A stretch of DNA of 64,000 nt, taken from positions 124,001-188,000 of the IMG/VR virus record IMGVR_UViG_3300042326_002445; one strand, given 5' to 3'. Under the pieces are notes generated by a model. That model ran no database searches and was not told where the DNA came from. It saw only the letters and a program-made list of their open reading frames with translations. Shown in pieces: positions 18,001-53,935 of this stretch (positions are counted from its first letter, which is position 1; every line of letters starts with the position of its first letter). Both the position numbers and the translations under genes were made by a program.

Positions 18001-20884
18001 TGGTAATGATAGATTTGTTATTACTGGAAATAGTGGAAATGATAGTAGTGGCGCATTTACTTATGTATTTAAGTTTAAATCAAATGGACAACAGGACGCT
18101 GACTTCTTTACTGGTCCGGGCATGGTCTATGAGTCAAAAATAAATGATATGGCAGTTACAGGAATAAACGACCTGTGCAACCAGTCATTTAAGTATCAAG
18201 TTTGGATGAGCAACGATGCAAGTATTATAGCGATAGGTAATCATAGATGGGATGCTCAGGCAGATGAGGTAAGTCCAAACGGCGAACCTCTTCCAGCTTT
18301 GTTCTACATAGATTTGTATAAAAAGCAAGTAACAGGATCTAGTGTCTCATATACTAAATTGCTAGAGCAAGGTCTGTCTCCTTCTTCTACAAGTAATGGT
18401 GCGCCAGTTGACGTATTTTGTTCTGCTATTTGGGGTGTAGCTAATGGCTCTAACAATTCTTTATATGATATATATGTGTGTTCTGGCATAGATCCAGATA
18501 CTGACTATTTAGATTATTTAGATTCAAATACCGCTAATTATAATGCTTCAAATTTTGAAAGACGTTTAGGCAGAGTGACTGTTTTCACTGCTTCAATTCC
18601 TTCCGGCAATGGAGCTGTAAAAAGAACAATAGAGCTAAGCGATATCGTACCTCCCACAGATCCTACTTTTAGTGAAAATAATAAATCATTTGCTAATTTG
18701 AATTTCTGGACTATGACGCCAGTAAGCGCAAAGAACGGTAGTTGTGGTTTAATGTTCTACAACAATACACTTGTTGCTTCTTCTTTGGGTCACCTTATGA
18801 AGATGAGTCCATCTAATTCTCAAGGCTCTGGTTGGAATCTTGATAGTATTGTTGGAGGATCTCCAGTTCCTAATGTGTCAGTCAAAAGAGTTTTAACTCC
18901 TTATTCCCAATACGGGTATGTTGGAAATACAAATAATACTAACAATATAACTTATGCAGATAATTCTGATATCTCAGTCATGTCTACGGTATCAGTACCA
19001 ACAGTAAACGCTTCTGCTTCTCCTGGATTTAATAAATTAGCATCCAAGATAGCATTTATTGAACTTTCAATTGACAACAATCCATATAGAAAAATATTTT
19101 CTATATCTAACTATACATCGTTGGTTGTTGGGAATGCTGATGTATCTCAAGTTGGCGTATTTGACGTAAATGAAGATATGAGTAGTAGTATTTGTTATCC
19201 AGCATATTCTGCTCTAAGTGCAAAAAGATTTGGCTACACATCTGGTCAGCCAAATCCAGAAACTCAAATATATAACCCAAGTATAAAGTCTTGGATTTAT
19301 GCATATGATTTGTCAAGCAGTCTTGGAGACGGAGAGTTGCAATATTCTGGATACGAATATACTTCAGATAACGAAGCTCATATTTTAGTAAAGCCACCTG
19401 TTCCAGATATAGAAAAGAAGCAGTTTTATTTTGGAGGCAATGAATTCTTGCCACTAGACGGGAATAATGTTTACCGTGATTATCACAATCAAATAGATCA
19501 GATAAAAGGCACTCTGATGCAGATGGACTGGAATGACGTTTCCGGCATCTTGTGGTGGGGAACTAATGACATATATGTGATGAGATCATACAAATATGAT
19601 CAGCACTATTCTCCATCTACTTCTGATATATTGTTGGAAAATTATGCAGCAAACAAGACTTATTATAAGAGTTTATCTTTGGGTATTCAAAGTGTTAACA
19701 AAAATGCTATGGTAAAATTCTCCATGCCAAATAATAGTAACCAATTAGTGGCAAATCCGGCTTGTGGAGACAACGATTATATTGGAACTAGTGGGTGCGG
19801 ATTGACAGGACCAAAAGTCATTACTGTTTCTGCAGTAACAAATTATGGCACTTTTGATTTAATGCATCAAAATTTTACATCTATAATACCGTTATTAAGA
19901 TCTAGAGAAAAACTTGGATTACAACGTTGTGTAGTTGTTTTAAATGACTTTACTGATCATATGAATGAACAAATATACAGAGATTCAGGATTTGGTTTTA
20001 ATAATGTAATTCCATTCTACAATTATTCTGCATCTAAATTTTCAAATCCATATAGAGATTACGCATTAGACATGTTTATAGATGATTCTATGAGTTTACT
20101 TTATAGTAAATCTGCATTGCAAATTAATCAGGGTGGTTTTTCTATGCCTAATATTAGTATACCAAGATGTGAAGGTAATATAGTTTTTGCTAGAAAATCA
20201 GTGTATGGATTATATAATACAAAATGGAATTATTTGATCAAGGATTTCGCTGGGTGCTTTGATCCAAACCATGGATGCATATATAATGGTGATAGAATGC
20301 TTTTGATTAAGCTGTCTTACATATATGAAGATTCAGTGTCTGCATCACATCCAGAGGCAGAATGGTATTTTGCTCCTGTTCTGACGACTATTTCTAATGC
20401 AGACGTGCCTGATTACAAGCCATCAATGGGAGCTTGTGTTTGTTCAGGTGAAATGCGGAACGCTAGTCGCAAAGTGTCTAAGTGGAAAATGAATGGGTCT
20501 TCAGGAGGAAATGATAAGAATTTATTAGATATAATAACTGTAGGAATTGGGGATACTTCTCCGGCACCTATTAGGAATAAAATAAATACTTCTTCTAGTG
20601 AAAATTCATCAGTCAAAGATTTAGTATTGTGTGGAAAAATTAGTTCAAACTTTATTAACTATGCGCTAAATAAAACTGGTTCTGCAAACATATCTGAATT
20701 AATGACAAAGATTAAAAACAGTTTATATGACGTAATTGAAGGACAAAAGTTCATGGATCCTGCAGGATGCATACATATAGTCGATACAGATTCATCAGAT
20801 CAAATGGATAATGTCAAAGAAGAATTTATGAGAAAGTTTATGAATACATTTAATGGATTTTACCATATCATAAGAGGCGCATAA
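9041..20884 (+). CDS. giant protein (3947 aa) with RCC1-like and FG-GAP/integrin-like beta-propeller repeats; probable tail fibre/adhesin
   Basis: RCC1-like MSCGIDFIVGI and KLVCGDSFFAVY (about 10736-11107). FG...ISAP...G.G.VY-type repeats (about 11468-13000). Ser/Glu linker at about 9715-9790. Asn/Ser/Gly-rich beta composition. Confidence 0.7.
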   Translation: MIKIRKIIYWHFAIYAGDAETINPESLPNDSISTLDMGLNVDNPIIVNGSPNVRAFSASTGYEWLIDISVANGITRDSNDDDKRTTIRSNNPNASPGFVWFDLAVVELKAVLGNPIVVDTLEQLSLVKDDNNDGARVQVKYVLFGAHKEGETGAQLRNEPNAFFDATNIPNEVSSEGDQTHQQLVDAMSSKTFVDEDGVPNSFFINIKYQEEVTKIGCCNIDVSESSSSSSEESSSSSSEESSSSSSSSSTLESCSSGLTLRSQPSIHNDRRRIWAVRQTADVNISNNAIYEGNFFLGSGQVVRKNYIASELVYADVEDVLNGEKSWNEINWQHAGYISFRENKPYAMALHKDPIFNKSDLSHSDGNLCTYHAYDNNFDLPVSIQSISWDTRGYLWALCSGGAKDSTPVTSNVVNGIESTEGVYGLIPGGWKKYPADMLYFGGSNTGTSSEYEDLNSSSLTGEIFSMSWGCDRDKKNEFLSIIDSDLNISIRKNKNSNINFPEDDNIIGDDGTLLKASSIYSGIEKICIIELDTKLPYLLSYNSVDSDLKNAIDIERSNNTQYSYMSCGIDFIVGITSSSQVKIFVNRSGSEIPSQDDADDLQEFINDDISNGYSVKKLVCGDSFFAVYLSSSSGASKLYARGYINGVSIWDGSDYDSSFIKYSSWDLSETKPILDIDAFGSYLIVVYSEGLSSSSNKSVYYTVSTVLSDLPIHNTSSASSSNTVDFIDYEFLNQLRKIYLDNTSNVIDEWANLTTRTSLISSKGLLGYNTDIYSNNLSGKINIFENSEYLTHPYFAQSQNIESRMQVDSGMFGYDVSSFVWQNESYLAISAPTEGSLLGANNGGILGQQNGQHGRGAIYIFKRYDKGFKVIQKIQHPDANAIAFGKQICLFATKDASDTSVMSLVCSYRGNTSDYTRIYYWNDVDQLFEWSELSDGLMTVGGLNLDPSTTDVSIFEIKRISDISISISCFTNNNKTGYAQFINTSNNITLINQCSGSYVKLSSFNNLSFGARFGLSCVYEPTVGGVTVAVGYPTFNSAYLSSSIISFIDSVEEDSLEIKPPDNALIQQGNGAVMLFYLNGALTSFESDVNGPLYKIIEGSNFNPNVSTKPYFGYDIDADYKHIVISSPYDTGYSAVGESSNIQEGGSVRVFEFNQPSALGERDVFDASQSIINLNSLSQFNVPQQVYQLGGGAYSLQWQKKKFGKFVKLISNKILISACDDDLVIGPSAQSGSYGNVFMLDKNKSGTWSFTGCYYDAHKGDRFGHKIEVLSSSPSNDQNDFIAFISAPGNMTSAKALNGFSQNAVVGNTDYRYGAGIVKSVVVSGSKALGILPSRIPSVLVNQDDNVSAEYFIKSSALGLKHVAHDISSSVANSRYVWKYYPARLLEKSAIKTSINENSIPSFKLGKFIKDPVFAEAEDFASTYSDIGAFTLSNTASNVSDISIANLSLYDKENLNIRVMEMHPRPYRTVDASMSSPDQEDSAAANLPQQIRSDYFDFATPTFNELNDNVYLYAPIISPQSDRWRGSIDNTNSFAIAPVRANRWIVPISKISNDNYSIFIDGIAVWNPTSASVEYNISGGYYFNSSPFIRSSTSPHTDVTGNPLIKPYNGTINSGFWWSTRNYISPGCVQLVDSSTEGHMVVWPNFNLPQGTSSANTNWGASITSFSGTENFYLGKLSIKPGALSSDKTGVDACKIDKGYFWGLKLADGSYNVFINAYNTSTSVTGHRLHQTSKYLTWSGCTVAEDRNTNSTEYSSVYTGYMPSYESYDFNLGHILSYPPINFRCSTGNTRPYNQTLGGASTIDAIKLAPNGSTHALYLNAVGWNNTLMNVGVKDIIIHGHYNYHGFQKSNNTGDTNQISTIADRRSQIVTFVSGYGSKIYSINGNNNGPSYFAPSIKFTCILDQRLSSYKSWKNNFGGLADWNTSGNPYSAWGKVAKNPSHFANSFTNNPSWVTNSYPNSFNARVAPTDTMYMVDLFWDYDPDSNTPSPSQIRAAIFSSNFEGNFTDVYDNMLLPKKTERGLAQSDFNLFPIRAYPLNRNQLTHLSCTVCPQVLHIGEAVFFTGARDPQNDSATAYDDSRSAYFSASQNLSSSTCSNALRVEYNTSYINIVSCKTFTDGIGLVVGSNTNESGVHLSSFIGSSGLGSSWCSSSSSSYINNFSYKYKTILYPSITSIDHFRPSAAGFSYWDNTGTSTNTSLATVGALYNGGGPSLLQWYSHFASVFTPNGVSGPESNGTIGEYAPTYYTLQGSYNLPYLYNASNGNSISFWSRYRYNNTNAQTLLDKFPATLNGLVGNYFATNPVYPKLGKHSSFKYPYKTNMLTGRGRNVQVSVLGAELRSISRDEIVYQNEFIYRKLSYHRQNSSGTVNESGAEFSPVHSIDTVGSVNASASNLGSYVNNQNTNGDTWSNDATNIVSLNISNRLSPEDNSNLSKSHIREEYQTDIATNTVNGDQISKQYRRFSLFDRVSPKDFFNNPETLVCLPTFGMPDLLDFAVTVNSFTHIFGLVNTFSDMPSGDYPDSGNVGAVGFTGNLTTNDKNNLGYNVDAGKQSAFWKAIKNGLAHVIDVNSSVISTSQGQRILTVTILASLNGNTWSANSPSKHSFGWKNNISTQNIFGGGLICAVITAKLDINGEVSSVKSTFANSEATLSGSIKRSTVGTGPQVLPETSWCRMGIWLQPLLGTRKISKDNSPHYWPGNFPWSASSDIKYLGVNPGDQATSSTNYFHTSPGMIKVPINRSYMIKLGKHIMLKYNSGSGSEKYFAVIGPCVYRIENDELDKGPLWWANQNKSSCFKMPQYVWDSRPIVFQKFGLSFTDMSTINSANALFAFSAYSGEAQRMVQSFFRNDSYTQDFGANLVSEFAAYGTLNGGGGSQFPPNEQWFDYNSETEGFRIPVGVGAVNNSVAILGEGVGFNVSEGSKIHAFVFWRNAFYKIEPSASATSKKPKITQIPIIATYQDADGNPDSIATQLESAYSLHRLNGFFNGNDRFVITGNSGNDSSGAFTYVFKFKSNGQQDADFFTGPGMVYESKINDMAVTGINDLCNQSFKYQVWMSNDASIIAIGNHRWDAQADEVSPNGEPLPALFYIDLYKKQVTGSSVSYTKLLEQGLSPSSTSNGAPVDVFCSAIWGVANGSNNSLYDIYVCSGIDPDTDYLDYLDSNTANYNASNFERRLGRVTVFTASIPSGNGAVKRTIELSDIVPPTDPTFSENNKSFANLNFWTMTPVSAKNGSCGLMFYNNTLVASSLGHLMKMSPSNSQGSGWNLDSIVGGSPVPNVSVKRVLTPYSQYGYVGNTNNTNNITYADNSDISVMSTVSVPTVNASASPGFNKLASKIAFIELSIDNNPYRKIFSISNYTSLVVGNADVSQVGVFDVNEDMSSSICYPAYSALSAKRFGYTSGQPNPETQIYNPSIKSWIYAYDLSSSLGDGELQYSGYEYTSDNEAHILVKPPVPDIEKKQFYFGGNEFLPLDGNNVYRDYHNQIDQIKGTLMQMDWNDVSGILWWGTNDIYVMRSYKYDQHYSPSTSDILLENYAANKTYYKSLSLGIQSVNKNAMVKFSMPNNSNQLVANPACGDNDYIGTSGCGLTGPKVITVSAVTNYGTFDLMHQNFTSIIPLLRSREKLGLQRCVVVLNDFTDHMNEQIYRDSGFGFNNVIPFYNYSASKFSNPYRDYALDMFIDDSMSLLYSKSALQINQGGFSMPNISIPRCEGNIVFARKSVYGLYNTKWNYLIKDFAGCFDPNHGCIYNGDRMLLIKLSYIYEDSVSASHPEAEWYFAPVLTTISNADVPDYKPSMGACVCSGEMRNASRKVSKWKMNGSSGGNDKNLLDIITVGIGDTSPAPIRNKINTSSSENSSVKDLVLCGKISSNFINYALNKTGSANISELMTKIKNSLYDVIEGQKFMDPAGCIHIVDTDSSDQMDNVKEEFMRKFMNTFNGFYHIIRGA
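9722..9769 (+). repeat. 24-bp direct repeat x2 (TCTAGTTCTTCTGAAGAGTCTAGT) in a Ser/Glu linker
   Basis: Exact copies at 9722-9745 and 9746-9769. Confidence 0.95.
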
Positions 20885-23800
20885 TGATTAGAAACCCATT
20901 TGAAACTACACAGTATGCGTCTAATTTTTTAAAAGAAAATATTATACTAGATTCTTCTGGAATTGGATTAACTGGCATAGACGTTTTAATGCAATTTCTT
21001 GTTAATCAGACAAGGATACGTCAAGAGGCAATCAGGATAGGTTATATTTCTAATAATCCTGCTAAAATAGACGGCGAAGATTACAGTCAAATAAGTTTGC
21101 TAGGACTTTCCTTTGATACGCCTCAGGGAATATATGATACTTCTCTGCTGATTGTAAATGCTGTTAAGCAAATGTTTGCTGGGCATCCATCTGGTTTGTA
21201 TGAAAAAGTTGCATATAGACCATCAATTATACAGTATCAAAATCCAGATGACGAAGTTTACGTATTGAGGGCAGGTGGATTTTTTCATAAAATAGGTGAC
21301 CCAAGTTCTGAAGCAACTACAATTGGAGACGATTATTTTGAGTATTTTGATGAAATTGTTGATGGAGATTATTTGACAAGTGATGATATTGATCGATTTA
21401 ATAATCCTCCATCTTTCGATAATCCATCAAGCCCTTACGCAACTCTTAATGAATATTTAAAGGATCAAGTTAAATGGGTTAACAGTGCTATTTCAGTTCT
21501 AAATAAATTAAAATTTATAAATAATAAACTTGTATTTACTTATCCATTTGCCGACATTGCATTTGGCACAGGATGTTCTTTTACTAAAACAATTAGTTCA
21601 ACAACAGCTCCAGACTCTAACGGCAAGCCAGTTGAAATAATACTAGACATGTCAGAGGTCGTGGGCTCCTGTATAGAAAGCGGCACTGATTCTTATGGTT
21701 ATATATGCATAAGATGGAGGAGCATGGGGAACGGCTCAAGATTTGTCATCATGCCTACACTGGGCTCAAATGCTCAGCAAACAGAATTTTTGAGAAAACC
21801 TTTGTGGGGCGCAGCTGTAGTCACTCCTTCGTCTGACCAACCATATGTTCACAGTAGTTCTCAAGGTCAAGGCTATTTAAGTTCTTCAAATTTTATTGAA
21901 TACGCTTCTTCTGATGAAATATTAAAAACATGGGATCCAGAAAGCGGAAATGTTTATGATCGTCCTGTAAGTCCAATTTTGAGATCAGGATGTATGAACG
22001 CTCCATGTTGCACCACAAACAATAATACAAATAAGCCTCCGTTCAGAGAGGGTGGAAATGATGCTAATTCTGATTTTGCCTGTATCTTAATAGATAAAGC
22101 ACTTTTTTCTACAGGTACAGGTTCTGAATGGGATAACAAAATTAGAATAGTTATTTTTTCTGGCTGTCAAAGTACGGGTGAAAATACTTCTTGGGAACTT
22201 GAGTTAAACTGTTTAGCATGCAACAACTGCAACAGCGATCTTTCTATTTGTGGCGGCGTTGCTTCTTCTAGCTCTAGTTCTGAAAACTTTAATTTTGGCG
22301 TATTTGTACTTGATGATCAGAATAAAATTGGTAAAATAGATCTTATTACTGGCAACCTGTCTGGAAGAATATTAAGAATAAAAAATGATGAAGGTAACAC
22401 TTTAGATGATCAAATACATGATATTGATTTTGACGATGAAGGAAATCTTTATGGTCTTGGAACTTCTGGCATTTTATATTTGATAAATAAAATAAATGGA
22501 CATGCAGATATTGTCGGAGACTCTGGACTAAGGAATACGAGCGGTCTTGGTTTTGGTAAAGATGGAAAATTATACACGGTTAATAATTCGACTTTATGTT
22601 CTTTAAATACTATAAATGGCGGTAGTACGTCAATAGGAAATATCGGTTACACTGGGAACGGAGATATATGTAGTGCTAAGTCTGGCACAAACAGATTGCT
22701 GGTGTCTGCCAAAAATGGTAACTCTAATATATTATTAGAAGTTGCAATAGGAACAAGCGGCGTTACTTCATCAGTAAAACTTTCTGTTGTTCCTAGAGTT
22801 TTTGGTTTGGCGAGAGAGCGGGGATCTTCTACCCCTCAACCTGTAGCGATTGCTGATCAAAAAATATATGCCTTTAATAGATGGGACACGGGCAATGCTT
22901 CAATGGTGGCTATATGTGATTTTTCACAATCTGGCTTATGTTGTGGCGTAGGAGCTGCATATTGGGATGGAGACTTTGAAGACGATAACGCTTTTAGGCT
23001 AACAGCAGAAGATTGTTCTGTCATACCAGTATGGTTAATATGTGAGCCTACAGCGAGTGGACAGCCCGTAAAGCTTGTAAAGATAGATGTAAAAACTGGT
23101 AATATTTTATCTCAAATAGATGTAGGTGGAAGCTACTCTGGTAGTATACCTATGGATATAGCGGTAAACGACACAGGAGAAATTTACATCAACGACAGCG
23201 ACAGGCTGTATCGCGTTGATCCTAATACGGGTATTGCTACAATAGTAGGCAATATAACATTCTCCACTCCGCAATACGCACCAATATTATCTGGTTTATC
23301 TTTTAGTAAAGACAATGTTTTGTACGGTTTTGCCGCCGATGGATATTTCCCGCCAGGCCCTCAGGCCTTAGAGAAATTTCCATTATTTACAATTGACACT
23401 CAGACTGCAGTTGCTTCTGTAGCCTGTGACGATTTTGGAATTGGCTGCAGTGGTGATGCTGCCGTATGGACAAATGATCTTTTAGAAAATTACTTTTTTA
23501 TTATAGGCTCTGGAGAGGTAAATGATCAAATTTATATTTCAAGATATGATTCAGCTGACCAAGAATGCATTGGTGAGTTAATTACTACTTCTGATGAATT
23601 TACATACGGAAATAAAGTTTGGGCAATTACAAATGCAAAAGACGGATTTTTATATGTAATTGTTGGTGAATCTAATAATAAAATTATTAAAATTGACCCA
23701 AATACTTATAGTTGGATTGATACTGGATTGAATGTTCAAAATATAGGAGTTGCTCACGGGGCTGCTTGGGCTCCTAATGATTTAGTGTGTGTAGGTGTAG

Positions 23801-26800
23801 ATGGAAATTCTTCTTCAAGTTCTTCAAGTTCTTCAAGTGACAATAATGATCCATGTGTTTGTTTGACATCTTCTTCAAGCAGTTCATCATCTAGTTCATC
23901 ATCTAGTTCATCATCTAGTTCATCATCTAGTTCATCATCTAGTTCATCATCTAGTTCATCATCTAGTTCTAGCTCAAGTAGTGCATGTCCAGATTGCGAT
24001 AACATCCCCTCTATAATATTAGATAGAGAAGATTGGGCTAATGGAATAGTCAATTGTAGCAAGGTTGGATTCCCATCTGATGCAGTACTAAAAATAAAAT
24101 GGTTCAAAACTTGTGCTACATGCTGTGATTGCCCGCAAGAAAATCAATTTTCTATAGAATGTGACATAGAAATTAGCATATGGGATATTGATTGCATTTC
24201 TTGGGTGGATTTTTGGCAGTGGCTTATTACAAGTGGTCAAGCTCAACTTGTGATATGTAGCGTTGACGGCGGTTCTTGTAAATTTTATTGGAGAGCAGAA
24301 TTTACAAGAGACGCAGATTTGCCTTCTATATTTTACTGGGATTTTTCACAAAGATTCCAAGATTTTTTCCCTGATTATCCCGTAGATTGCTCATGCCCGA
24401 TATGTGATCCAAGTCCAAATTGCTGCACTTCAACATGCTTTGGATTGGGGACCATGATTAAGATGGCAGATGGTAGTGAAAAAAGGATAGAAGACATTAA
24501 AGAAGGAGACATACTCTTATCAGCTTACTTTAACGAATTTGGTATAGAGAGAAATCCAACTCTTGAGCAAATAAATAGCGGATGGACATTAAGTGATTCT
24601 CAATATATAAAATTTGCAGAAACAAGAGTTAAAAAGATTAGGATTGGTTCTGAATCTTCTATATACAAGTTTTCAGATTATTTGAAACTTACTTTTGAGC
24701 ACCCAGTGTTGATCATGGATGTTGATGGAGTTTTAAAGTTTAGAAGTGCAGTATACATGCAAGATAATGTATATGGGTACAACATAGATTTGGAAATGAC
24801 ACCGATGTCACATCCAAGTGTAATAAACAAAAAATCAATTACAATTAATATTACAACTGAGCCATTCCATTGCATATTCGCAGGAGGCATGCTAGTTCAT
24901 ACGGGTTCATCTAATAACTATACTAACACGATAGGATTTGGCGAAATAGGTGTTAGCATAAATACTAGCCTTTATAAGGATTTAATAAATCCAGCAACTT
25001 CTACTATAGAGAATGGCTCTACAAATATTGGGTTAATTTCAGATGGACTTGGAACCAACAATCCTACTACTGGCAGCCCCCTAGATGGGAATGAAGTGGT
25101 TGTTGCAGATAATCCATTCGTATGTCAATTTGCATGCAGGTGCTCAAGTGGAAATTGTAACACTGTTAAGTTTGTAAGTTCATGGCAATTAGGCAATCCA
25201 ATTGCTCTATGTGCAAATCCTACATCTTGTTGTTCGGATGGTCAATGCGCAAGAGGAGACGCAGATTGTAAAGATTCTTCAGATAATGTAGTACTTATAG
25301 AAAGAACTATAGTTGCTAGAGACTGCAATGATGCTTGTAGAAAATGTGCTAACATGGCCACTCAAGATCTTACTTTTGTGGGGAGCCCAGCAAATGAGTG
25401 CTTTAACGCTTCTTTGCTGTGCGGCGCAGGCAGCTCTTCATCTTCAGTTATTTCTTCATCTTCTAGCAGTAGTTCTCAAATTACTGGAGATGAGGTAGTG
25501 CTTTGGATAAATCCGCCTATGAAAGCTGTAGACAATGGCAGTGGAAGCATGATAGTTCAAGGCGAGTATACCGCTCATCTTTTAAGTAACGGTAACGATG
25601 GCACATTATTTGCTCAACAATTCCAAGTTCCTGTTAATTGCGAATGGAGAGTATATAAGTTTAGAATGTGGGGCGGAAGTGAATATTTCAACGAGAGTAC
25701 TGGCGGATCAGATGGAAATCAATTAAGCAGCAACATAGCTTCTATCAGAATTAACATATTCAAATTGCAGCAATCAACAGGTACTTGGGAAATATATTCA
25801 AGCGCCACTGGATATTTGAAGATTTCAAGTTCTCTAATACTGAATGATCAGGGCAGTACTTTTACTACTCCGAATCCATCAAAGAATTTTCAAATTGATA
25901 TGAATTTTGACCCCAGCGTATCTACAACTCTTAATCAGGGATCTTATCTTTTAGCTATTGGCGGAGTGCGTATGGTTACAAGCTCATTTTTGCCAAAGTT
26001 AATTTGGACAAATGGTCAAATTCCTGGAGGCAAGTATAAAACAGATAATTTTAATTGGGGATCTTTTAATGAGGAATCAGGTGGAGGTAGTTTATCTGGT
26101 GCTATAATTGGCATACGTAGTCCTACATGTGTTGTAAGTTCATCATCTAGTTCATCATCTAGTTCTAGCAGCAGTAGTTCAAGTTCTGGGTGTGTTGTTT
26201 GGACTGGTCCTGGCTGCCCGGACATGGATGGTGACGGGTTTGTTGGTGGTTCAGACCTTGCAGTATATTTCAGTGCTTCTGCAGATTATAACCCGATTGC
26301 TGACTTAAATGGAGATGGCGTTGTTGACGGATTGGATCTTGGTATTCTTCAATCATATTGGGGTTCGTGCGTCGAATGTCCTAATTGGAACGGTAGCAGT
26401 AGTTCAAGCAGTAGTTCAAGCAGTTCTAGCTTCTCATGCGTTCAGTCATTTGGACAATGGTTAAATACAACTGGGACTCAGGCATATTCTAGCATTATAG
26501 ATTTAAATGGATTTGATATCCAATCAGATTCCAGCGGTGAATATATAGATATTTGTATTGAATATGTGACAGGTTCAGAAGCTGCTGATAGGATAATGAT
26601 AGTAGCCACAAGAGATGACGAATTGTCTACAGATGCTGTCCTTAAGAATGGTGATTTAGACTATGAGCATTATGGAAGAAGACTTCTCTATGAAAATGGT
26701 CAATTATCTGGTTTTTCTCATCCAGATCATCCCATCTTTGCATACGAAGGCAGCCAATTTACTCTACCTAGTAGGTCAATATTGTTTGATAGTGGATGTG

Positions 26801-28899
26801 TTGCTACTGGGGCTACTTCTTCTGTTATCACAACGATAAGAGTAAGACAATTTTCTGTTGCATTTGATCCGGTAGATCCTATGTACAAAAAACTAAGATT
26901 AGTAGTATTTGGAGTATGTAGCTCGGATTTAGACCCAGATAGTATAACAAATTGGTGGGTAGATTTAGGATGTGATATTCTCAATTGTAATGTTACATCT
27001 TCTAGCTCTTCATCGTCCTCAAGCAGCTCGTCTTCGTCTTCAAGTGCATCTTCTTCATCTTCTTCAGGATGCACTAGAATATGGTCTAATCCAGGATGTC
27101 CAGATTTAAACAACGACGGATTTATTAATGGTAATGATTTTGGCTTTTTCTTGGGTATTATGTTCGGACCAGTAGATTATAATAACATTGTTTCTATTGC
27201 AGCCGATTTAGATGGGGATGGAAACATTAGTGGAGCTGACATGGGTCTCTTTCAAGGACTTACCTATGGATGCATAAAGTGTCCAAATTTCGATTGGTCT
27301 GCTAGTTCATCATCTAGTTCATCATCTAGTTCATCATCTAGTTCTAGCAGTTCATCATCTAGTTCTAGCAGTTCATCATCTAGTTCATCCATTCCATCCG
27401 GTCCTCCACTCAAAATTTATGGATCTAATAAATTTGGAAGATTTATTTCTGATGCTAAGAATGATAGAAATGTAGTAGACATTATATATATAGGTCAAGA
27501 TTCAAGATTTTGGGTTTCTGGATTAAATAGAGGCTTTAATTCTCTTGGAACAAAATCTTATGGGTCTCCATTTATGCCAGCTACTACATCAAACTCATAC
27601 GATATTGCACAAAATGTAACTACTTTATCAAATGACTGGGAGCCAGGATTTTTTCGTAGATTTAGTGAAACTGGAGCTATACTCCAGAAAGGTAGTGCTG
27701 TTTTCCCTGATGAAGGCATATATGAATCGTTACATAATTCTGTTAAGCCATATGGAAAGGGAATTGAGTGGGGATTTGCGCCAGAAATAGTAGAAGAATT
27801 TTATGTAGAATATTCTTCTGGTATATATGCGGCAAACACTGAACCTTCTATCGGTATTCCGCTAGATGATAATTCTGTATTGGAATACATGGTCATTAGA
27901 GTTGCTAATTTCACTGGTTCTTACACTCTTTCTGTATCTTCATACGATGGAGAAAATATATTTGTTAGCTCCCCGTTTGCTGGCGATTCACTTTCTACCT
28001 CAGAATGGGTAGTAGACAAAGTTGAGTTCCTTTACTCGTACAATGTTCATGGCGTATCTGGTCTTAAATTCTCATTCTTGGGCTCTATGAGAGACGGGCC
28101 TCGATCAGGAATAAGCGGAGATTTTGCAGTAGGACTGCACAGTTTGCATAGAAAAGGCATAGGAGGATTGGCTATTACTCCATTCCATACCTATGAAGGA
28201 GCAACTCTTGAATCAATACGGTCAGATTTTAACAAAGCTGAAGTGATTTTTACGCTTCAAACATATTTAAAAGTAATAAATCAAAGATCAGTTTCTGCTT
28301 ACAACTCTTTAGATGTCACTGTTGGTAGTCCAGGTAGAATGGTTTTCTTCATACAGGCAAATTCAAATTCTGAATCTACTCTTTTAGAGGATATTCAGGA
28401 CATAAAAGACCAAATTACGGCAGTATGTCTTAGCCTTGGCTTTGATGAGGAAAACTTTACTTTCTGTGTAATGATTCCAGCGGCTGTAAGTGAATTTGAT
28501 GAAGAATTAGTCAGTCAGCGTCAAACAATCGCTGATGCTATTATAGAGGATCAAACCTCTGTAGGCAATACTGTTTTTGTTAACATCCCTGCAATATTCT
28601 CTTACAGAGAAATGATTGATAATGGCTGGGCGACTGTCTCTGAACTTGCTCCTAGTAGTTTTACCGGAGGTCAATGCTGCGATGTTTTCGAGTATTGTGT
28701 AAGGTGGTCCGATTCAGACCCTACATTGTGCTTAGATTTTCGCAGACGCTGGACGTGCTGGGATTGTGATGGCCCTGGCCCAACTCTTGTGTGTGGCGTA
28801 ATTGAGGCCGGAGGGCCAGGCACAGGAGGTAGTTCTTCTTCCACTTCAGAAGGAGAAAGTAGCAGCTCTTCAAGTAATGAAAAGTTCCCATTTATTTAA
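20884..28899 (+). CDS. giant modular protein (2671 aa): Cys-bounded modules, two propeller regions, Hint domain, two dockerin/EF-hand-like modules and about 9 poly-Ser linkers
   Basis: Motifs read from the translation: DIDFDDEGNLYG / DIAVNDTGEIY; CFGLGTMIKMADG...TFEHP...GMLVHT; DLNGDGVVDGLDLG. Confidence 0.8.
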   Translation: MIRNPFETTQYASNFLKENIILDSSGIGLTGIDVLMQFLVNQTRIRQEAIRIGYISNNPAKIDGEDYSQISLLGLSFDTPQGIYDTSLLIVNAVKQMFAGHPSGLYEKVAYRPSIIQYQNPDDEVYVLRAGGFFHKIGDPSSEATTIGDDYFEYFDEIVDGDYLTSDDIDRFNNPPSFDNPSSPYATLNEYLKDQVKWVNSAISVLNKLKFINNKLVFTYPFADIAFGTGCSFTKTISSTTAPDSNGKPVEIILDMSEVVGSCIESGTDSYGYICIRWRSMGNGSRFVIMPTLGSNAQQTEFLRKPLWGAAVVTPSSDQPYVHSSSQGQGYLSSSNFIEYASSDEILKTWDPESGNVYDRPVSPILRSGCMNAPCCTTNNNTNKPPFREGGNDANSDFACILIDKALFSTGTGSEWDNKIRIVIFSGCQSTGENTSWELELNCLACNNCNSDLSICGGVASSSSSSENFNFGVFVLDDQNKIGKIDLITGNLSGRILRIKNDEGNTLDDQIHDIDFDDEGNLYGLGTSGILYLINKINGHADIVGDSGLRNTSGLGFGKDGKLYTVNNSTLCSLNTINGGSTSIGNIGYTGNGDICSAKSGTNRLLVSAKNGNSNILLEVAIGTSGVTSSVKLSVVPRVFGLARERGSSTPQPVAIADQKIYAFNRWDTGNASMVAICDFSQSGLCCGVGAAYWDGDFEDDNAFRLTAEDCSVIPVWLICEPTASGQPVKLVKIDVKTGNILSQIDVGGSYSGSIPMDIAVNDTGEIYINDSDRLYRVDPNTGIATIVGNITFSTPQYAPILSGLSFSKDNVLYGFAADGYFPPGPQALEKFPLFTIDTQTAVASVACDDFGIGCSGDAAVWTNDLLENYFFIIGSGEVNDQIYISRYDSADQECIGELITTSDEFTYGNKVWAITNAKDGFLYVIVGESNNKIIKIDPNTYSWIDTGLNVQNIGVAHGAAWAPNDLVCVGVDGNSSSSSSSSSSDNNDPCVCLTSSSSSSSSSSSSSSSSSSSSSSSSSSSSSSSSSSSSSSACPDCDNIPSIILDREDWANGIVNCSKVGFPSDAVLKIKWFKTCATCCDCPQENQFSIECDIEISIWDIDCISWVDFWQWLITSGQAQLVICSVDGGSCKFYWRAEFTRDADLPSIFYWDFSQRFQDFFPDYPVDCSCPICDPSPNCCTSTCFGLGTMIKMADGSEKRIEDIKEGDILLSAYFNEFGIERNPTLEQINSGWTLSDSQYIKFAETRVKKIRIGSESSIYKFSDYLKLTFEHPVLIMDVDGVLKFRSAVYMQDNVYGYNIDLEMTPMSHPSVINKKSITINITTEPFHCIFAGGMLVHTGSSNNYTNTIGFGEIGVSINTSLYKDLINPATSTIENGSTNIGLISDGLGTNNPTTGSPLDGNEVVVADNPFVCQFACRCSSGNCNTVKFVSSWQLGNPIALCANPTSCCSDGQCARGDADCKDSSDNVVLIERTIVARDCNDACRKCANMATQDLTFVGSPANECFNASLLCGAGSSSSSVISSSSSSSSQITGDEVVLWINPPMKAVDNGSGSMIVQGEYTAHLLSNGNDGTLFAQQFQVPVNCEWRVYKFRMWGGSEYFNESTGGSDGNQLSSNIASIRINIFKLQQSTGTWEIYSSATGYLKISSSLILNDQGSTFTTPNPSKNFQIDMNFDPSVSTTLNQGSYLLAIGGVRMVTSSFLPKLIWTNGQIPGGKYKTDNFNWGSFNEESGGGSLSGAIIGIRSPTCVVSSSSSSSSSSSSSSSSSGCVVWTGPGCPDMDGDGFVGGSDLAVYFSASADYNPIADLNGDGVVDGLDLGILQSYWGSCVECPNWNGSSSSSSSSSSSSFSCVQSFGQWLNTTGTQAYSSIIDLNGFDIQSDSSGEYIDICIEYVTGSEAADRIMIVATRDDELSTDAVLKNGDLDYEHYGRRLLYENGQLSGFSHPDHPIFAYEGSQFTLPSRSILFDSGCVATGATSSVITTIRVRQFSVAFDPVDPMYKKLRLVVFGVCSSDLDPDSITNWWVDLGCDILNCNVTSSSSSSSSSSSSSSSSASSSSSSGCTRIWSNPGCPDLNNDGFINGNDFGFFLGIMFGPVDYNNIVSIAADLDGDGNISGADMGLFQGLTYGCIKCPNFDWSASSSSSSSSSSSSSSSSSSSSSSSSSSSSSIPSGPPLKIYGSNKFGRFISDAKNDRNVVDIIYIGQDSRFWVSGLNRGFNSLGTKSYGSPFMPATTSNSYDIAQNVTTLSNDWEPGFFRRFSETGAILQKGSAVFPDEGIYESLHNSVKPYGKGIEWGFAPEIVEEFYVEYSSGIYAANTEPSIGIPLDDNSVLEYMVIRVANFTGSYTLSVSSYDGENIFVSSPFAGDSLSTSEWVVDKVEFLYSYNVHGVSGLKFSFLGSMRDGPRSGISGDFAVGLHSLHRKGIGGLAITPFHTYEGATLESIRSDFNKAEVIFTLQTYLKVINQRSVSAYNSLDVTVGSPGRMVFFIQANSNSESTLLEDIQDIKDQITAVCLSLGFDEENFTFCVMIPAAVSEFDEELVSQRQTIADAIIEDQTSVGNTVFVNIPAIFSYREMIDNGWATVSELAPSSFTGGQCCDVFEYCVRWSDSDPTLCLDFRRRWTCWDCDGPGPTLVCGVIEAGGPGTGGSSSSTSEGESSSSSSNEKFPFI
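23881..23964 (+). repeat. 12-bp tandem repeat AGTTCATCATCT x7 encoding poly-Ser
   Basis: Seven exact units; the same 12-mer recurs at 26137-26160 (x2) and 27304-27381 (x5, interrupted by AGTTCTAGC). Confidence 0.95.
24436..24903 (+). other. Hint (intein-like/Hedgehog-type) domain within the 2671-aa protein, 156 aa
   Basis: Block A CFGLGTMIKMADGSEKRIEDIKEGD, block B LTFEHP, C-terminal FHCIFAGGMLVHT. No homing endonuclease and no terminal Asn. Confidence 0.85.
26215..26370 (+). other. dockerin type I / EF-hand-like Ca-binding module 1
   Basis: CPDMDGDGFVGGSDL...ADLNGDGVVDGLDLGILQSYWGSC contains paired DxxxDGxxxxxD loops. Confidence 0.8.
27097..27273 (+). other. dockerin type I / EF-hand-like Ca-binding module 2
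   Basis: CPDLNNDGFINGNDF...ADLDGDGNISGADMGLFQGLTYGC. Confidence 0.8.
27304..27381 (+). repeat. poly-Ser tract built from AGTTCATCATCT and AGTTCTAGC units
   Basis: Three 12-mers, a 9-mer, a 12-mer, a 9-mer and a 12-mer. Confidence 0.9.
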
Positions 28900-29350: not shown

Positions 29351-30568
29351 TTATTTTAAATCGCTTAGATTATATATCTTACTTTCGTTCGGTATGCATA
29401 TTTTGTAGTCTTCTATAAGAACCCAGTGCCAAAGTCTGGGTTTTTTATATTCTGCATAATCTCCGTATCCATCAGTTAAAACTATAATTGCGTCATATTT
29501 TTTAATTTTATTATTTACATAATCGCTAATACATCTAAATGAAGTTCCGCCATATCCTAATAAAGTTTTACTTTTTTTGTTTATTTCATAAACTTTTACG
29601 TCAAAGTTATATAAAAATACGTTAAATTTATCTTTTGGAAAAGCCATTGCGGAAGACATAAAAGCTGAGCTCCAGTTTAAACATGAGCCGCTTGTATCCA
29701 TAAAAATATGAATGTTTCTTTTAGCTATTGTATCACACAGCGATTCATTATTTGGAAGTGCATAGTCTGATTGCCAGTCTCTTCTTCTAGGTTGCTCAAA
29801 CCAGCTTTCAACCTGAGAGTTTTGGTTTTCAAATCTTTTTACTATTTTATTTAAAACATTTTGCCAATTTGTGTTTTTTAGATCTTCTTCTTCGTTAAAG
29901 TTTAATGCTTTTTCTATGTTTCCAGGTTCTGTCCCTGGAATTGAATATTTTTGTTTAATTTTTTTTATTAGTTTTTGCAGATCTTTTAGATCTACTCCGT
30001 TCTTTTTCAGCCAATCAGTAATTTTTTTTAGTTGTTCATCCCCTAAATTACTAATTTTTTCTAACCATTCGTGGTCTATTCCATTAGCAAATTTGTTAAT
30101 ATCTATATTGGAATTTATAATATTTTTGTAATAATATTCAAAACATCTTCCGCTTTGCAGAGAAGCGTCAATTTTTTCCAAATAAACAGCGTTTTGTAAA
30201 ACTGGGCAATTGGAAGGATGAAAATCAAATTCATTCTTAAGTATCTCGTTTACGCATATATCCATGCATACATTTTCAATTTTAACGACTTGAGGTTTGC
30301 TTGAAAATCTTTTTCCATGATTTAATATGATATGAAGAAGTTCATGAGATACTATTGCAGCTTTTTCATAAATAGATAATGGTTCCCAAAAATATGGATT
30401 GTAAGCTATATGAAGTGGAGCCCTAGACCTGGTGCTGAAATTTACACAAGCAGTAGGTATGTCATTATTTTCTAAGAAATCAAAACACATTACAAGATTG
30501 CTCAAAATCTTGCTCTTCTTTGCTAAAACATTGCATATTTCTGTTTTTTCAAAATTGTTTTGCATCAT
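29351..30568 (-). CDS. metallopeptidase-like (HExxH) plus vWA domain protein (DUF2201-type MoxR partner)
   Basis: VSHELLHIIL; MIDAS motif FMDTSGS, GGTSF, LTDG. Confidence 0.85.
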   Translation of the reverse strand: MMQNNFEKTEICNVLAKKSKILSNLVMCFDFLENNDIPTACVNFSTRSRAPLHIAYNPYFWEPLSIYEKAAIVSHELLHIILNHGKRFSSKPQVVKIENVCMDICVNEILKNEFDFHPSNCPVLQNAVYLEKIDASLQSGRCFEYYYKNIINSNIDINKFANGIDHEWLEKISNLGDEQLKKITDWLKKNGVDLKDLQKLIKKIKQKYSIPGTEPGNIEKALNFNEEEDLKNTNWQNVLNKIVKRFENQNSQVESWFEQPRRRDWQSDYALPNNESLCDTIAKRNIHIFMDTSGSCLNWSSAFMSSAMAFPKDKFNVFLYNFDVKVYEINKKSKTLLGYGGTSFRCISDYVNNKIKKYDAIIVLTDGYGDYAEYKKPRLWHWVLIEDYKICIPNESKIYNLSDLK

Positions 30569-30570
30569 GA

Positions 30571-32867: not shown

Positions 32868-33416
32868 GTGTCCGAAGAAAACTTTGAAGCCTTACAAGAA
32901 AAAATAAGAAACTTTTCTAAGTACAGAGTTGCTTCAGAAAGAATATCTTGGCATAGATACTTTTTTGATCTTTGTTATCTTGTTTCTTCAAGATCTCCAG
33001 ATGCTCAGACTAGGCATGGTGCGGTAATCGTAGATAAAGAAAACAGAATTGTATCTACAGGGTACAACGGGTTCCCTTCAAATGGACCAGATGAAATTTT
33101 GCCAAATGTACGCCCAGAAAAGTATCCATACATAGTCCACGCAGAGATGAACGCGCTCCTTTCTGCTCGTTGCGATGTGCGTGGCTACTCGGTGTACATC
33201 ACTGGACTACCGTGTAGAAGTTGTCTTTTGCACCTGTTGGGAGCAGGAATCTCAAAAATCTTTGCTGGTTCTAGAACTTTTCAAGAAGATTCTGAATCCA
33301 TGATCGCAAAGGCAGTTCTGTGCGAGCTTTACGGAGTGTCAGTATACACTCAAGACAGTCAAGATCTAGATAAAATCGTGCCCTGGGACCACAAAAAGTG
33401 GCTTGAGGGTACTTGA
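32868..33416 (+). CDS. dCMP deaminase
   Basis: RHGAVIV...STGYNG...HAEMNA...PCRSC; GTG start. Confidence 0.9.
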   Translation: MSEENFEALQEKIRNFSKYRVASERISWHRYFFDLCYLVSSRSPDAQTRHGAVIVDKENRIVSTGYNGFPSNGPDEILPNVRPEKYPYIVHAEMNALLSARCDVRGYSVYITGLPCRSCLLHLLGAGISKIFAGSRTFQEDSESMIAKAVLCELYGVSVYTQDSQDLDKIVPWDHKKWLEGT

Positions 33417-33441
33417 CTTTAGCGGCACTATACAGTACAAT
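33413..33441 (+). promoter_or_regulatory. sigma70-type promoter TTGACT-N17-TACAAT upstream of the sigma factor gene
   Basis: -35 at 33413-33418, -10 at 33436-33441, 17-nt spacer; SD AAGGAGG at 33461. Confidence 0.75.
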
Positions 33442-33471
33442 GGTGTTTCGCCCCATCCACAAGGAGGATAT

Positions 33472-44280: not shown

Positions 44281-44607
44281 ATGCGCAGGATTTTTAGTTT
44301 AATAAAAGATTTTGTAAAAACAGCATCAACGTCTCATTCTGTTTCTAGATTCCAATCAGCAGTTTTAAAATCTGGCAAATCTAGTTCCTCAAGAAAAAGC
44401 TTAGAGGTTAAGCTGCACTACAAGCGCTCATCTGAATTAGTGTCAGTAGACGTTGACGAATATACGAAGTCTGGGCATAAACATCGCAAGTATGAACTAG
44501 AAAACATATCGCCAAGCAATTTTTCTAGATTAGAAAAAATGATATCAAAAGGCCAATGGGGAATGTTTTTTGCGGTAGTTAACAAACACAGGGTTAAAGA
44601 AGACTAA
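44281..44607 (+). CDS. hypothetical protein
   Basis: 108-aa ORF, N-terminus MRRIFSLIKDFVKTAS; convergent overlap with the helicase stop. Confidence 0.65.
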   Translation: MRRIFSLIKDFVKTASTSHSVSRFQSAVLKSGKSSSSRKSLEVKLHYKRSSELVSVDVDEYTKSGHKHRKYELENISPSNFSRLEKMISKGQWGMFFAVVNKHRVKED

Positions 44608-47114: not shown

Positions 47115-47143
47115 TATTTATATTTTTCGAGGACTTTTGGTCC

Positions 47144-52633: not shown

Positions 52634-52638
52634 TTTTT

Positions 52639-53929: not shown

Positions 53930-53935
53930 TACAGT

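What the first reader, a model, noticed from the sequence alone, without database searches (positions are those of the whole stretch)
24436..24903. Hint domain in the middle of a giant structural protein, ending His-Thr instead of His-Asn
Seen: Cys1 block (CFGLG..IKMADG), the TxxH block (TFEH) and a C-terminal ...GMLVH-T-G at residues 1185-1340 of 2671. Established: C-terminal cleavage and splicing need the terminal Asn (or Gln), while Hedgehog-type Hints do only the N-S acyl shift and N-side cleavage, sometimes transferring the N-fragment to a nucleophile. Inference: the protein autocleaves into an N-piece of about 1184 aa (propellers) and a C-piece of about 1487 aa (dockerins), or covalently couples the N-piece to a lipid, glycan or host surface.
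Basis: partly seen in the sequence, partly recalled or inferred. Interest (0 to 1): 0.68.

Follow-up and report, generated by a model that had tools for sequence, protein, structure and literature searches.

The report
Asn-less Hint domain in phage giant
A self-processing Hint module of the bacterial intein-like kind sits mid-way in a 2671-residue protein of an uncultured lake-water giant phage; it has lost the asparagine needed to cut at its far end, so it can probably only cut off or hand over the front half, which makes it a modest new variant of a known domain.

Summary
Window 24436-24903 encodes residues 1185-1340 of a 2671-aa ORF (20884-28899, +). It starts with Cys1185, carries T-x-x-H at 1270-1273, and ends His1339-Thr1340 followed by Gly1341.

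It is a true Hint domain:
- A family profile built without it matches it at E 1e-47.
- The same family matches solved bacterial intein-like (BIL) domains at E about 1e-15.
- An AlphaFold model (pLDDT 90.7) is closest to BIL structures, then inteins and Hedgehog.

Among 127 complete relatives, Cys1 is invariant and 118 end in His-Asn. The nine exceptions (T, S, D, V) all fall in one clade of orthologous giant proteins from related huge phages. That clade keeps Cys1 and both His, and tails over 180 aa occur only in non-Asn members.

Best reading: a BIL/Hog-like module that can do only the first step. That step is an N-S acyl shift at Thr1184-Cys1185, followed by N-side cleavage or, less likely, transfer. 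Splicing and C-side cleavage are excluded. Activity itself is untested.

"Structural protein" is not shown: neighbours are DNA-metabolism genes. Dockerins are confirmed. Propellers are only sub-threshold.

This is a new variant of a known kind, of moderate interest.

The parts
20884..28899 (+). ORF of 2671 aa (P0002) that carries the Hint domain. It is the last of three translationally coupled giant ORFs (1936, 3947 and 2671 aa).
20884..22257 (+). Conserved N-terminal domain (res 1-458). It marks the orthologous group.
   Evidence: 47-53% identical to P0004 and the L013 ORF; 27-30% identical to P0013, P0035 and L014-L016. No PDB or Pfam match.
22291..23913 (+). Repeat-rich region (res ~470-1010), possibly beta-propellers.
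   Evidence: Only sub-threshold Pfam hits: DUF4394, Kelch_6, DUF5074. Not folded here.
24079..24435 (+). Cys-rich segment just before the Hint (res 1066-1184). It includes the near-invariant Cys at -4 (C1181) and the -1 residue Thr1184.
24433..24438 (+). Predicted scissile or thioester-forming bond, Thr1184|Cys1185.
   Evidence: Cys1 is invariant in 127/127 complete domains. The chemistry is inferred from the Hint family (PMC4031507).
24436..24903 (+). Hint domain, res 1185-1340.
24691..24702 (+). Block B T-x-x-H (T1270-F-E-H1273).
   Evidence: His is invariant in A1 and present in 115/127 domains; Thr or Ser in 115/127.
24898..24906 (+). End of the domain: His1339-Thr1340, then Gly1341. Relatives have His-Asn here.
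24904..25452 (+). Post-Hint Cys-rich segment (res 1341-1523).
   Evidence: It aligns weakly with post-Hint segments of clade members.
26188..26394 (+). Dockerin-like module 1 (res ~1769-1837).
   Evidence: NCBIfam dockerin_GC sub-threshold. One of the two Pfam Dockerin_1 stretches. 91% identical to a module of the 5596-aa ORF of the same genome.
27067..27297 (+). Dockerin-like module 2 (res ~2062-2138).
   Evidence: Best Pfam Dockerin_1 stretch, 2074-2120. Weak PDB dockerin hits. A paralogous module lies in the 2587-aa ORF.
27409..28629 (+). C-terminal domain (res 2176-2582). It is shared with the L013 orthologue, where it also lies downstream of the Hint.
   Evidence: Weak, untested lead to SGNH/GDSL esterases.
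28882..28896 (+). Extreme C-terminal K-F-P-F-I motif after a poly-Ser run. A K + hydrophobic end is present in all 13 clade members whatever the tail length.
29351..32193 (-). DUF2201_N metallopeptidase-like gene and AAA_3 ATPase gene. They are syntenic markers downstream of the Hint gene.
   Evidence: The same order is seen beside P0035 (L004) and P0019 (L005).

Best explanation
Residues 1185-1340 are a bacterial-intein-like (type-A-BIL-like) Hint autoprocessing domain built into a modular giant protein of an uncultured freshwater huge phage. It is not a mobile intein. It keeps what the first Hint step needs: Cys1185 as nucleophile and Thr1270/His1273 of block B. It lacks what the later steps need: the terminal residue is Thr1340 instead of Asn, and +1 is Gly1341.

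The most likely course is as follows. After folding, Cys1185 attacks the Thr1184 carbonyl (N-S acyl shift). The resulting thioester is resolved by water or a small thiol. The protein is then split into an N-piece (1-1184: conserved N-domain, repeat region, Cys-rich segment) and a C-piece (1185-2671). The C-piece keeps the Hint fused to the Cys-rich segment, two dockerins, the C-terminal domain and the conserved terminal K-hydrophobic motif. There is no splicing and no C-side cleavage.

Shown: domain identity, residue pattern, clade-wide conservation and orthology. Inferred: that the acyl shift and cleavage actually happen, and when.
For: Identity of the domain:
- Leave-one-out family HMM E 1e-47.
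- Family profile against solved BILs E 5e-16 and 5e-15, then inteins.
- AF2 pLDDT 90.7. Foldseek top hits are BIL2 6y75 and BIL 2lwy, then inteins and Hedgehog.
- Relatives match Pfam Hint-clan models: Hom_end_hint 30/49, Intein_splicing 29/49, PT-HINT 21/49.

BIL-like character: the +1 residue is mostly K, A or G across the family.

Functional constraint on the N-side:
- Cys1 is present in 127/127 domains, block-B His in 115/127 and penultimate His in 123/127.
- The nine non-Asn domains keep all three, with Thr or Ser at B:7. The 13 clade members are only 18-35% identical to this protein over domain plus flanks.

Asn loss is a lineage trait, not an error:
- All nine non-Asn domains sit in one supported clade (97/88) and need at least two replacements.
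- A further orthologue, L013, ends His-Ser-Gly.
- Tails over 180 aa (191-1503 aa) occur only in non-Asn members. Asn members of the clade have tails of 28-52 aa.

Orthology: a shared N-domain and shared synteny with DUF2201_N/AAA_3.

Chemistry (PMC4031507, PMC7664689): Thr B:7 and His B:10 act at the N-terminal junction. Mutating the terminal Asn abolishes C-terminal cleavage. BILs lack the +1 nucleophile and give mainly cleavage products.
Against: There is no biochemical or proteomic evidence, and no RNA or protein data for this uncultured phage.

By the family alignment the block-F position that is Asp or Glu in many relatives (F:4, which influences N-side reactions) is Thr1324 here and varies across the clade.

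The invariant penultimate His, normally tied to Asn cyclisation, has no obvious job in an N-cleavage-only domain.

Cys1 lies in a Cys-rich stretch with a near-invariant Cys at -4. Its conservation could therefore partly reflect a disulfide or metal site rather than catalysis.

Pfam does not call the domain above threshold.
Confidence: 0.55

Rival explanations
1. The Hint is catalytically silent. It is kept as a folded structural or spacer module, perhaps a disulfide- or metal-bound knot with the flanking cysteines, and the 2671-aa protein stays in one piece.
For: The terminal Asn is lost and the F:4-equivalent is not acidic. The surroundings are Cys-rich, with a near-invariant Cys at -4 that could pair with Cys1. 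Pfam scores are below threshold.
Against: Cys1, block-B His (with Thr or Ser at B:7) and the penultimate His are all kept in every non-Asn member, although clade members share only 18-35% identity with this protein. A purely structural role would not be expected to fix exactly the catalytic positions. The block-B His is not a cysteine partner.
Confidence: 0.25
2. The thioester at Thr1184 is not hydrolysed. It is passed to another nucleophile, which covalently joins the 1184-aa N-piece through its C-terminus to a lysine of another phage or host protein, or to a lipid or glycan hydroxyl. Hedgehog does this with cholesterol, and the Tetrahymena BUBL BIL2 does it with lysines.
For: The closest solved structure is BUBL BIL2, which forms isopeptide conjugates without ATP (PMC8616854). 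Hedgehog Hint uses only the first step, for cholesterol transfer (PMC7664689). Most relatives carry the Hint at the very C-terminus of fibre-like phage proteins, where it could activate the C-terminus of the mature part.
Against: No acceptor-recruiting region was recognised after the Hint: no sterol-recognition-like or adduct-recognition region. In this protein the 'leaving' part would be a 1487-aa multi-domain piece with its own conserved end, which looks like a functional product rather than a discarded catalyst. No data address adducts.
Confidence: 0.12
3. In the Thr/Ser sub-branch the hydroxyl at the last position (Thr1340; Ser in P0004 and L013) takes over as a nucleophile. It either accepts the N-piece as a branched ester or cuts the His1339-Thr1340 bond by an N-O shift.
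For: All three members of the sub-branch have a hydroxyl residue there (T, S, S) next to the invariant His.
Against: The sister sub-branches have Val or Asp at the same place and the same architecture. Three sequences are too few. As far as I know, no such Hint chemistry has been described.
Confidence: 0.05
4. A canonical (mobile) intein that splices out and rejoins the two halves.
For: Cys1, T-x-x-H and the penultimate His are intein-like. Weak Pfam and NCBIfam intein hits on the first block.
Against: There is no terminal Asn, Gln or Asp, and +1 is Gly. There is no endonuclease insert (156 aa). Every orthologue found carries the Hint. Module order around it differs between orthologues: the P0002 1872-2012 module lies before the Hint in P0004 and L013. 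HN orthologues have only a 28-52 aa tail, so there is no interrupted host domain.
Confidence: 0.01

Closest known systems
Type A bacterial intein-like (BIL) domains / Pfam PT-HINT (e.g. Clostridium thermocellum BIL, PDB 2lwy)
   Same: Best sequence-profile and fold matches. Cys1, T-x-x-H and a block G of the ...VH type. A non-nucleophilic +1 residue. Embedded in variable, modular extracellular-type proteins rather than conserved enzymes. They give mainly cleavage products (PMC7664689, PMC4031507).
   Different: Type A BILs end His-Asn and can cut their C-side and occasionally splice. Here G:7 is Thr, so only the N-side step is possible. The host is a giant phage protein. P0002 itself does not reach any Pfam Hint-clan threshold.
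Tetrahymena thermophila BUBL BIL2 (PDB 6y75/6tmm)
   Same: Top hit by profile (E 5e-16) and by Foldseek. A BIL that turns the N-side thioester into a useful product.
   Different: BIL2 has the terminal Asn (mutated N143A in the crystal form) and is flanked by ubiquitin-like domains, which it conjugates to lysines (PMC8616854). No ubiquitin-like flank is seen here.
Hedgehog/Hog C-terminal autoprocessing domain (PDB 1at0)
   Same: A Hint that uses only the N-S acyl shift, has no terminal Asn, and stays attached to what follows it (PMC7664689). Same fold (rank 37).
   Different: A more distant match than BILs or inteins. Pfam Hint scores 12.9 bits against a cut-off of 29.7. No sterol-recognition region was recognised. 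Here block G is still intein/BIL-like with the penultimate His.
C-terminal Hint of jumbo-phage fibre-like virion proteins (phrog_38766; Erwinia phage Alexandra gp112, Dickeya phage AD1 gp108)
   Same: Same Hint family: phrog_38766 covers P0002 1180-1340 at E 3e-6. A phage-encoded, non-intein Hint attached to a modular protein.
   Different: Those are ~480-aa proteins with collagen-like repeats, in a tail-gene module. The Hint is at the very end and finishes His-Asn plus a ~10-aa tail. Here the Hint is internal, lacks Asn, is followed by 1331 aa, and has no tail-gene context.

Membership tests
Hint (Hedgehog/intein) superfamily | Hint fold | tested here: met
   AF2 with the family alignment gives pLDDT 90.7. 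Foldseek probability is 1.00 to BILs, inteins and Hedgehog, with TM up to 0.83 by target.
Hint (Hedgehog/intein) superfamily | Block A nucleophile (Cys/Ser1) and block B T-x-x-H | tested here: met
   C1185 and T1270/H1273 are present and conserved in the family.
Hint (Hedgehog/intein) superfamily | Significant sequence-profile match to known members | tested here: met
   The family profile hits PDB BILs and inteins at E 5e-16 to 1e-8. P0002 matches the leave-one-out profile at E 1e-47. P0002 alone is below every Pfam cut-off.
Class 1 intein | Terminal Asn (or Gln/Asp/Glu) able to cyclise | tested here: not met
   Thr1340.
Class 1 intein | Cys/Ser/Thr at +1 of the C-extein | tested here: not met
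   Gly1341.
Class 1 intein | Insertion in a conserved site of a host protein, with intein-less homologues | tested here: not met
   All orthologues found carry the Hint. Module order around it differs between them, and HN orthologues have only short tails. The search for Hint-less homologues was not exhaustive.
Type A BIL / PT-HINT | Hint with Cys1 and a non-nucleophilic +1 residue, in a non-conserved modular protein | tested here: met
   The closest solved structures are BILs.
Type A BIL / PT-HINT | C-terminal His-Asn | tested here: not met
   His-Thr here. Met in 118/127 relatives.
Type A BIL / PT-HINT | Pfam PF07591 gathering score | tested here: not met
   No PT-HINT hit for P0002. 21 of 49 relatives match at E<0.01.
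Hedgehog/Hog autoprocessing domain | N-side step only: no terminal Asn, Hint followed by further sequence | tested here: met
   This is a functional resemblance only.
Hedgehog/Hog autoprocessing domain | Pfam PF01079 gathering score and a sterol/adduct-recognition region after the Hint | tested here: not met
   Hint scores 12.9 bits against 29.7. Nothing was recognised after the domain.
Any autoprocessing Hint | Demonstrated self-cleavage or thioester formation | not testable with these tools
   Needs expression and mass spectrometry.
Dockerin type I (C-piece) | Pfam PF00404 gathering score | tested here: met
   36.1 bits against 22.9, in two stretches. No cohesin was found in the held record.

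The most novel reading that the evidence does not exclude
The Asn-less Hint is a one-shot ligase. The Thr1184 thioester is passed to an amine or hydroxyl of another molecule (a virion protein, a host envelope component, or the protein's own partner). The propeller-bearing N-piece thereby becomes covalently attached without ATP. The wider family of C-terminal Hints on phage fibre-like proteins would work the same way. That would be a phage counterpart of Hedgehog cholesteroylation and BUBL conjugation.
Probability: 0.12. Interest if true: 0.8.

Novelty: new variant of a known kind. Interest (0 to 1): 0.45.

Why it matters
Huge phages encode many giant proteins of unknown function. In this record 12 ORFs over 1200 aa make up about 44% of the DNA held. 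A built-in self-cutting module would mean that at least one such gene is a polyprotein giving two products, which changes how these genes should be annotated and studied.

For the Hint field, the clade is a natural experiment. Orthologous proteins end His-Asn with short tails, or end His-Thr/Ser/Val/Asp. The long C-terminal extensions (over 180 aa) occur only among the non-Asn members. Throughout, the N-side catalytic residues stay fixed. This shows how a BIL can drift towards a Hedgehog-like, N-side-only design.

The wider family of non-intein Hints on fibre-like proteins of cultured jumbo phages (Erwinia, Dickeya, Yersinia) has, as far as my literature searches reached, never been examined experimentally. 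It is easy to test.

Tried and rejected
- Single-sequence AF2 of residues 1150-1400 failed (pLDDT 31). Only the alignment-based run was usable.
- tblastn of the P0002 Hint against 50,697 phage records found nothing. A relative's Hint (P0031) was needed to reach cultured phages.
- The search for homologous proteins on region 1100-1420 gave only one tandem-BIL protein, matching the first block.
- The search for related loci in viral contigs with the N-domain returned only an identical copy of the same phage.
- The 13-row clade alignment was too divergent for the metagenome scan. A 6-row alignment worked.
- Searches of the held record for tail sheath, baseplate J and cohesin found nothing.
- PHROG scans of 10 ORFs from the first 100 kb gave only replication genes, so a virion role could not be supported.
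- PDB sequence searches with the N-domain profile, the C-piece and the 3947-aa neighbour gave nothing useful.
- ESM-atlas look-ups gave only weak leads.
- The intein reading was rejected (see rivals).
- Literature searches found no paper on non-intein Hint domains in phage virion proteins.
- No other genetic code was needed.
Full report
**Setting.** The window is bases 124001-188000 of a 223,646-base IMG/VR virus record that CheckV rates 55% complete. The same stretch occurs in 24 lake-water metagenome runs, so this is an uncultured freshwater huge phage. GC is about 35% and table 11 reads long ORFs throughout. The finding lies in ORF 20884..28899 (+), 2671 aa (P0002). This is the last of three giant ORFs (1936, 3947 and 2671 aa) whose stops and starts overlap.

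**Check of the observation.** Window 24436-24903 is residues 1185-1340. It begins CFGLG..IKMADG, holds LTFEH (Thr1270, His1273) and ends GGMLVH-T, with Gly1341 next.

Pfam and NCBIfam alone give only sub-threshold hits to the first block: Hom_end_hint 19 bits, Hint 12.9 bits, an intein-containing radical-SAM model 13.8 bits. PHROGs gives phrog_38766 ('virion structural protein') at E 3e-6. It covers exactly residues 1180-1340 against the C-terminal third of that profile.

**Is it a Hint domain?**
- An exhaustive phmmer search with residues 1170-1360 found 268 proteins at E<=1e-3 (best 3e-35). About fifty of the best 150 listed are matched over the whole domain in a single stretch.
- I aligned 48 of these with the query (A1). 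Cys1, the block-B His and the penultimate His are invariant.
- The members match Pfam Hint-clan models: Hom_end_hint 30/49, Intein_splicing 29/49, PT-HINT 21/49, Hint_2 16/49, Hint 14/49.
- A profile built from the 48 relatives without P0002 matches P0002 1178-1346 at E 1e-47, so the assignment is not circular.
- The A1 profile hits solved structures: Tetrahymena BUBL BIL2 (6y75/6tmm, E 5e-16), the Clostridium thermocellum bacterial intein-like domain (2lwy, 5e-15), then many inteins.
- AlphaFold2 on the single sequence failed (pLDDT 31). With A1 it gave pLDDT 90.7 and pTM 0.86.
- Foldseek against the PDB ranks BIL2 and 2lwy first (TM 0.77-0.83 by target), then inteins, Hedgehog 1at0 and Vint, all at probability 1.00.

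The domain is therefore a Hint, and its nearest characterised kin are BIL domains.

**How unusual is His-Thr?** Among 127 domains with both ends aligned, from 101 proteins:
- Cys1 is present in 127.
- Block-B His is present in 115, with Thr or Ser three residues before it in 115.
- The penultimate His is present in 123.
- The last residue is Asn in 118.
- The +1 residue is mostly Lys, Ala or Gly, and seldom a nucleophile. That is the BIL signature (PMC7664689, PMC4031507).

The nine non-Asn domains are P0002 (Thr), P0004 (Ser), P0010/11/21 (Asp) and P0019/35/43/57 (Val). All nine keep Cys1, Thr/Ser-x-x-His and the penultimate His.

A maximum-likelihood tree puts them in one supported clade of 13 (97/88). 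The clade has three branches: a Thr/Ser pair, a four-member His-Asn group, and an Asp+Val group. Asn was therefore replaced at least twice. A metagenome scan added an orthologue, the L013 ORF of 2506 aa, whose Hint ends His-Ser-Gly.

The Thr codon is not an assembly error. A second IMG/VR contig is identical over 20 kb. Contigs of four further lake runs cover the domain without a difference. Contigs cannot exclude rare variants.

**Orthology and architecture.**
- The first ~458 residues of P0002 are 47-53% identical to P0004 and L013, and 27-30% identical to P0013, P0035 and L014-L016.
- P0035 and P0019 lie in the same gene order as here: giant ORFs, the Hint protein, two small ORFs, then DUF2201_N and an AAA ATPase on the other strand.
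- These are therefore orthologous proteins of related huge phages, built as a conserved N-domain, variable modules, the Hint, and a tail.
- The variable modules differ: a subtilase in P0019, RCC1 repeats in P0035, and sub-threshold propeller-like repeats here.
- One module, P0002 1872-2012, lies after the Hint here but before it in P0004 and L013.
- Tail length tracks the last residue. His-Asn members of the clade have tails of 28-52 aa. Asp members have 31 aa. Val members have 44 or about 485 aa. Thr/Ser members have 191, 1331 and 1503 aa. In the wider family most His-Asn domains are 1-17 aa from the protein's end.
- All 13 clade proteins end in Lys followed by three to five mostly hydrophobic residues, here K-F-P-F-I after a poly-Ser run. 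A Cys four residues before Cys1 is nearly invariant.

**What it is not.** It is not a mobile intein, for these reasons:
- There is no cyclisable terminal residue and no +1 nucleophile.
- At 156 aa there is no room for an endonuclease.
- Every orthologue found has the Hint.
- The flanks are shuffled modules rather than a split conserved domain.

**How it most likely works.** From established intein, BIL and Hedgehog chemistry (PMC4031507, PMC7664689):
- Cys1 with Thr B:7 and His B:10 performs the N-S acyl shift.
- Transesterification needs a +1 Cys, Ser or Thr.
- C-side cleavage needs cyclisation of Asn (or Asp, Gln, Glu), and is lost when Asn is mutated.

Here only the first step is possible. 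I therefore propose that a thioester forms at Thr1184-Cys1185 and is resolved mainly by hydrolysis or thiolysis. This gives an N-piece of 1184 aa and a C-piece of 1487 aa that keeps the Hint at its N-terminus.

The evidence that the step is still used is evolutionary. The exact N-side catalytic residues are fixed in a clade that dropped Asn repeatedly, and whose members are only 18-35% identical to this protein over domain plus flanks. Long, multi-domain C-terminal extensions occur only where Asn is gone. That fits a design in which the Hint must not detach from what follows. I rate this at 0.55.

**Rivals.**
- A silent structural Hint (0.25). This is favoured by the Cys-rich setting, the -4 Cys and a non-acidic residue at the F:4-equivalent position (Thr1324 by the family alignment).
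- Transfer of the N-piece to another nucleophile (0.12). The closest solved relative, BUBL BIL2, makes isopeptide conjugates (PMC8616854), and Hedgehog esterifies cholesterol. No acceptor-recruiting region is visible here.
- A role for the Thr/Ser hydroxyl itself (0.05).
- A true intein (0.01).

- The dockerins are real by Pfam (36 bits against 22.9, two stretches) and lie in the C-piece. Copies occur in two other giant ORFs of the genome, one 91% identical. No cohesin was found in the part of the genome held.
- 'Propellers' rest on sub-threshold hits only.
- 'Structural protein' is unproven. The flanking genes are a Holliday-junction resolvase, a DUF2201_N/AAA pair, dCMP deaminase, a sigma-factor-like gene, an SNF2 helicase and glycosyltransferases. 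No sheath, baseplate or other virion family was recognised in the record.
- Indirect support for a virion link comes only from the wider Hint family. In cultured jumbo phages the same kind of Hint ends ~480-aa fibre-like proteins annotated as virion structural proteins, among tail and tail-fibre genes. Erwinia phage Alexandra gp112 combines collagen-like repeats with a Hint ending His-Asn|Thr plus 10 aa. Dickeya phage AD1 gp108 sits in the same position among the tail genes.
- In BFVD the fold is joined to FN3, PASTA and collagen repeats in many uncultured phage proteins.

**Novelty.** Hint domains that use only the first step (Hedgehog), BILs without a +1 nucleophile, and Hint-bearing phage proteins (phrog_38766, 'Hint domain containing protein' entries) are all on record. 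What is new here:
- A clade of BIL-like Hints inside orthologous giant proteins of freshwater huge phages.
- Repeated replacement of the terminal Asn while block G and the N-side residues stay intact.
- Long C-terminal extensions found only in the non-Asn members.

I found no paper on non-intein Hints in phage virion proteins, but the library searched is incomplete. I class this as a new variant of a known kind, with interest 0.45.

**Limits.** There is no experimental evidence of cleavage. Both fold jobs went on the Hint, so the other domains are unfolded. 45% of the genome is missing. The F:4 assignment depends on the alignment. Statements about type A and type B BILs beyond the cited reviews rest on my own knowledge.

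Noticed in passing
whole record G000 (window = 124001-188000); window 3234-28899: The 223.6-kb virus record has 12 ORFs longer than 1200 aa (largest 5596 aa). Together they make about 32,900 codons, roughly 44% of the record. Almost none has a Pfam or PHROG match.
   Followed up: partly
window 26188-26394 and 27067-27297; G000 46880-63670 and 63734-71497: Dockerin-like modules recur in three giant ORFs of the phage. One pair is 91% identical, which suggests recent duplication or conversion. No cohesin was detected in the held part of the genome.
   Followed up: partly
window 23811-23969, 26137-26165, 26395-26424, 27004-27062, 27302-27398: Poly-Ser linkers between modules are coded by tandem 12- or 21-nt units (e.g. 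AGTTCATCATCT). Contigs of all four lake runs break, or show 1-base gaps, inside 23871-23973, so linker length may vary or simply defeat assembly.
   Followed up: no
window 24424-24426 (Cys1181): A Cys four residues before Cys1 is nearly invariant in the 13-member clade (absent in P0004). It might form a disulfide or metal site with Cys1, that is, a possible redox or Zn gate on the acyl shift.
   Followed up: no
window 28882-28896; ends of P0004, P0013, P0019, P0035, P0057, P0010, L013-L016: All clade proteins end in Lys plus 3-5 mostly hydrophobic residues, often after a poly-Ser run. This holds whether the tail after the Hint is 28 or 1503 aa. It looks like a conserved C-terminal tag of unknown role.
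   Followed up: partly
window 27391-28818: The C-terminal domain (res ~2170-2645) gives a weak language-model lead to SGNH/GDSL esterases (score 0.82, below the reliable range). There is no Pfam or PDB sequence support.
   Followed up: partly
window 29351-32193 (- strand); L004 7105-9760; L005 12423-15065: A DUF2201_N metallopeptidase-like gene and an AAA_3 (MoxR-like) ATPase gene lie on the opposite strand just downstream of the Hint gene. This is conserved in at least three related phages.
   Followed up: no
L005 7521-11735 (P0019); L004 849-6410 (P0035): Orthologues carry different payloads before the Hint: a subtilase (Peptidase_S8, E 2e-34) in P0019 and RCC1 repeats in P0035. They share a conserved ~485-aa Cys-rich tail after a Hint ending His-Val.
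   Followed up: partly
proteins P0003, P0005, P0027 and others: Many database hits are proteins with 5-10 tandem Hint/BIL domains (e.g. 9 in P0005, 8 in P0003). This architecture was not pursued here.
   Followed up: no
L007 5098-6540 (Erwinia phage Alexandra gp112): This cultured-phage relative combines collagen-like Gly-X-Y repeats with a C-terminal Hint ending His-Asn followed by Thr and nine more residues. It has a canonical +1 nucleophile and could in principle splice on a 10-aa tail.
   Followed up: no
window 24118: A single A>C difference appears in one lake run (X22), upstream of the Hint. It is the only variant seen in 1.8 kb across four runs.
   Followed up: no
window 231-809, 32868-33416, 33403-34317, 44604-47114, 47863-50259: Other recognisable genes in the window: a Holliday-junction resolvase, dCMP deaminase, a sigma-factor-like protein, an SNF2-family helicase and a GT2+GT1 fusion glycosyltransferase.
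   Followed up: no
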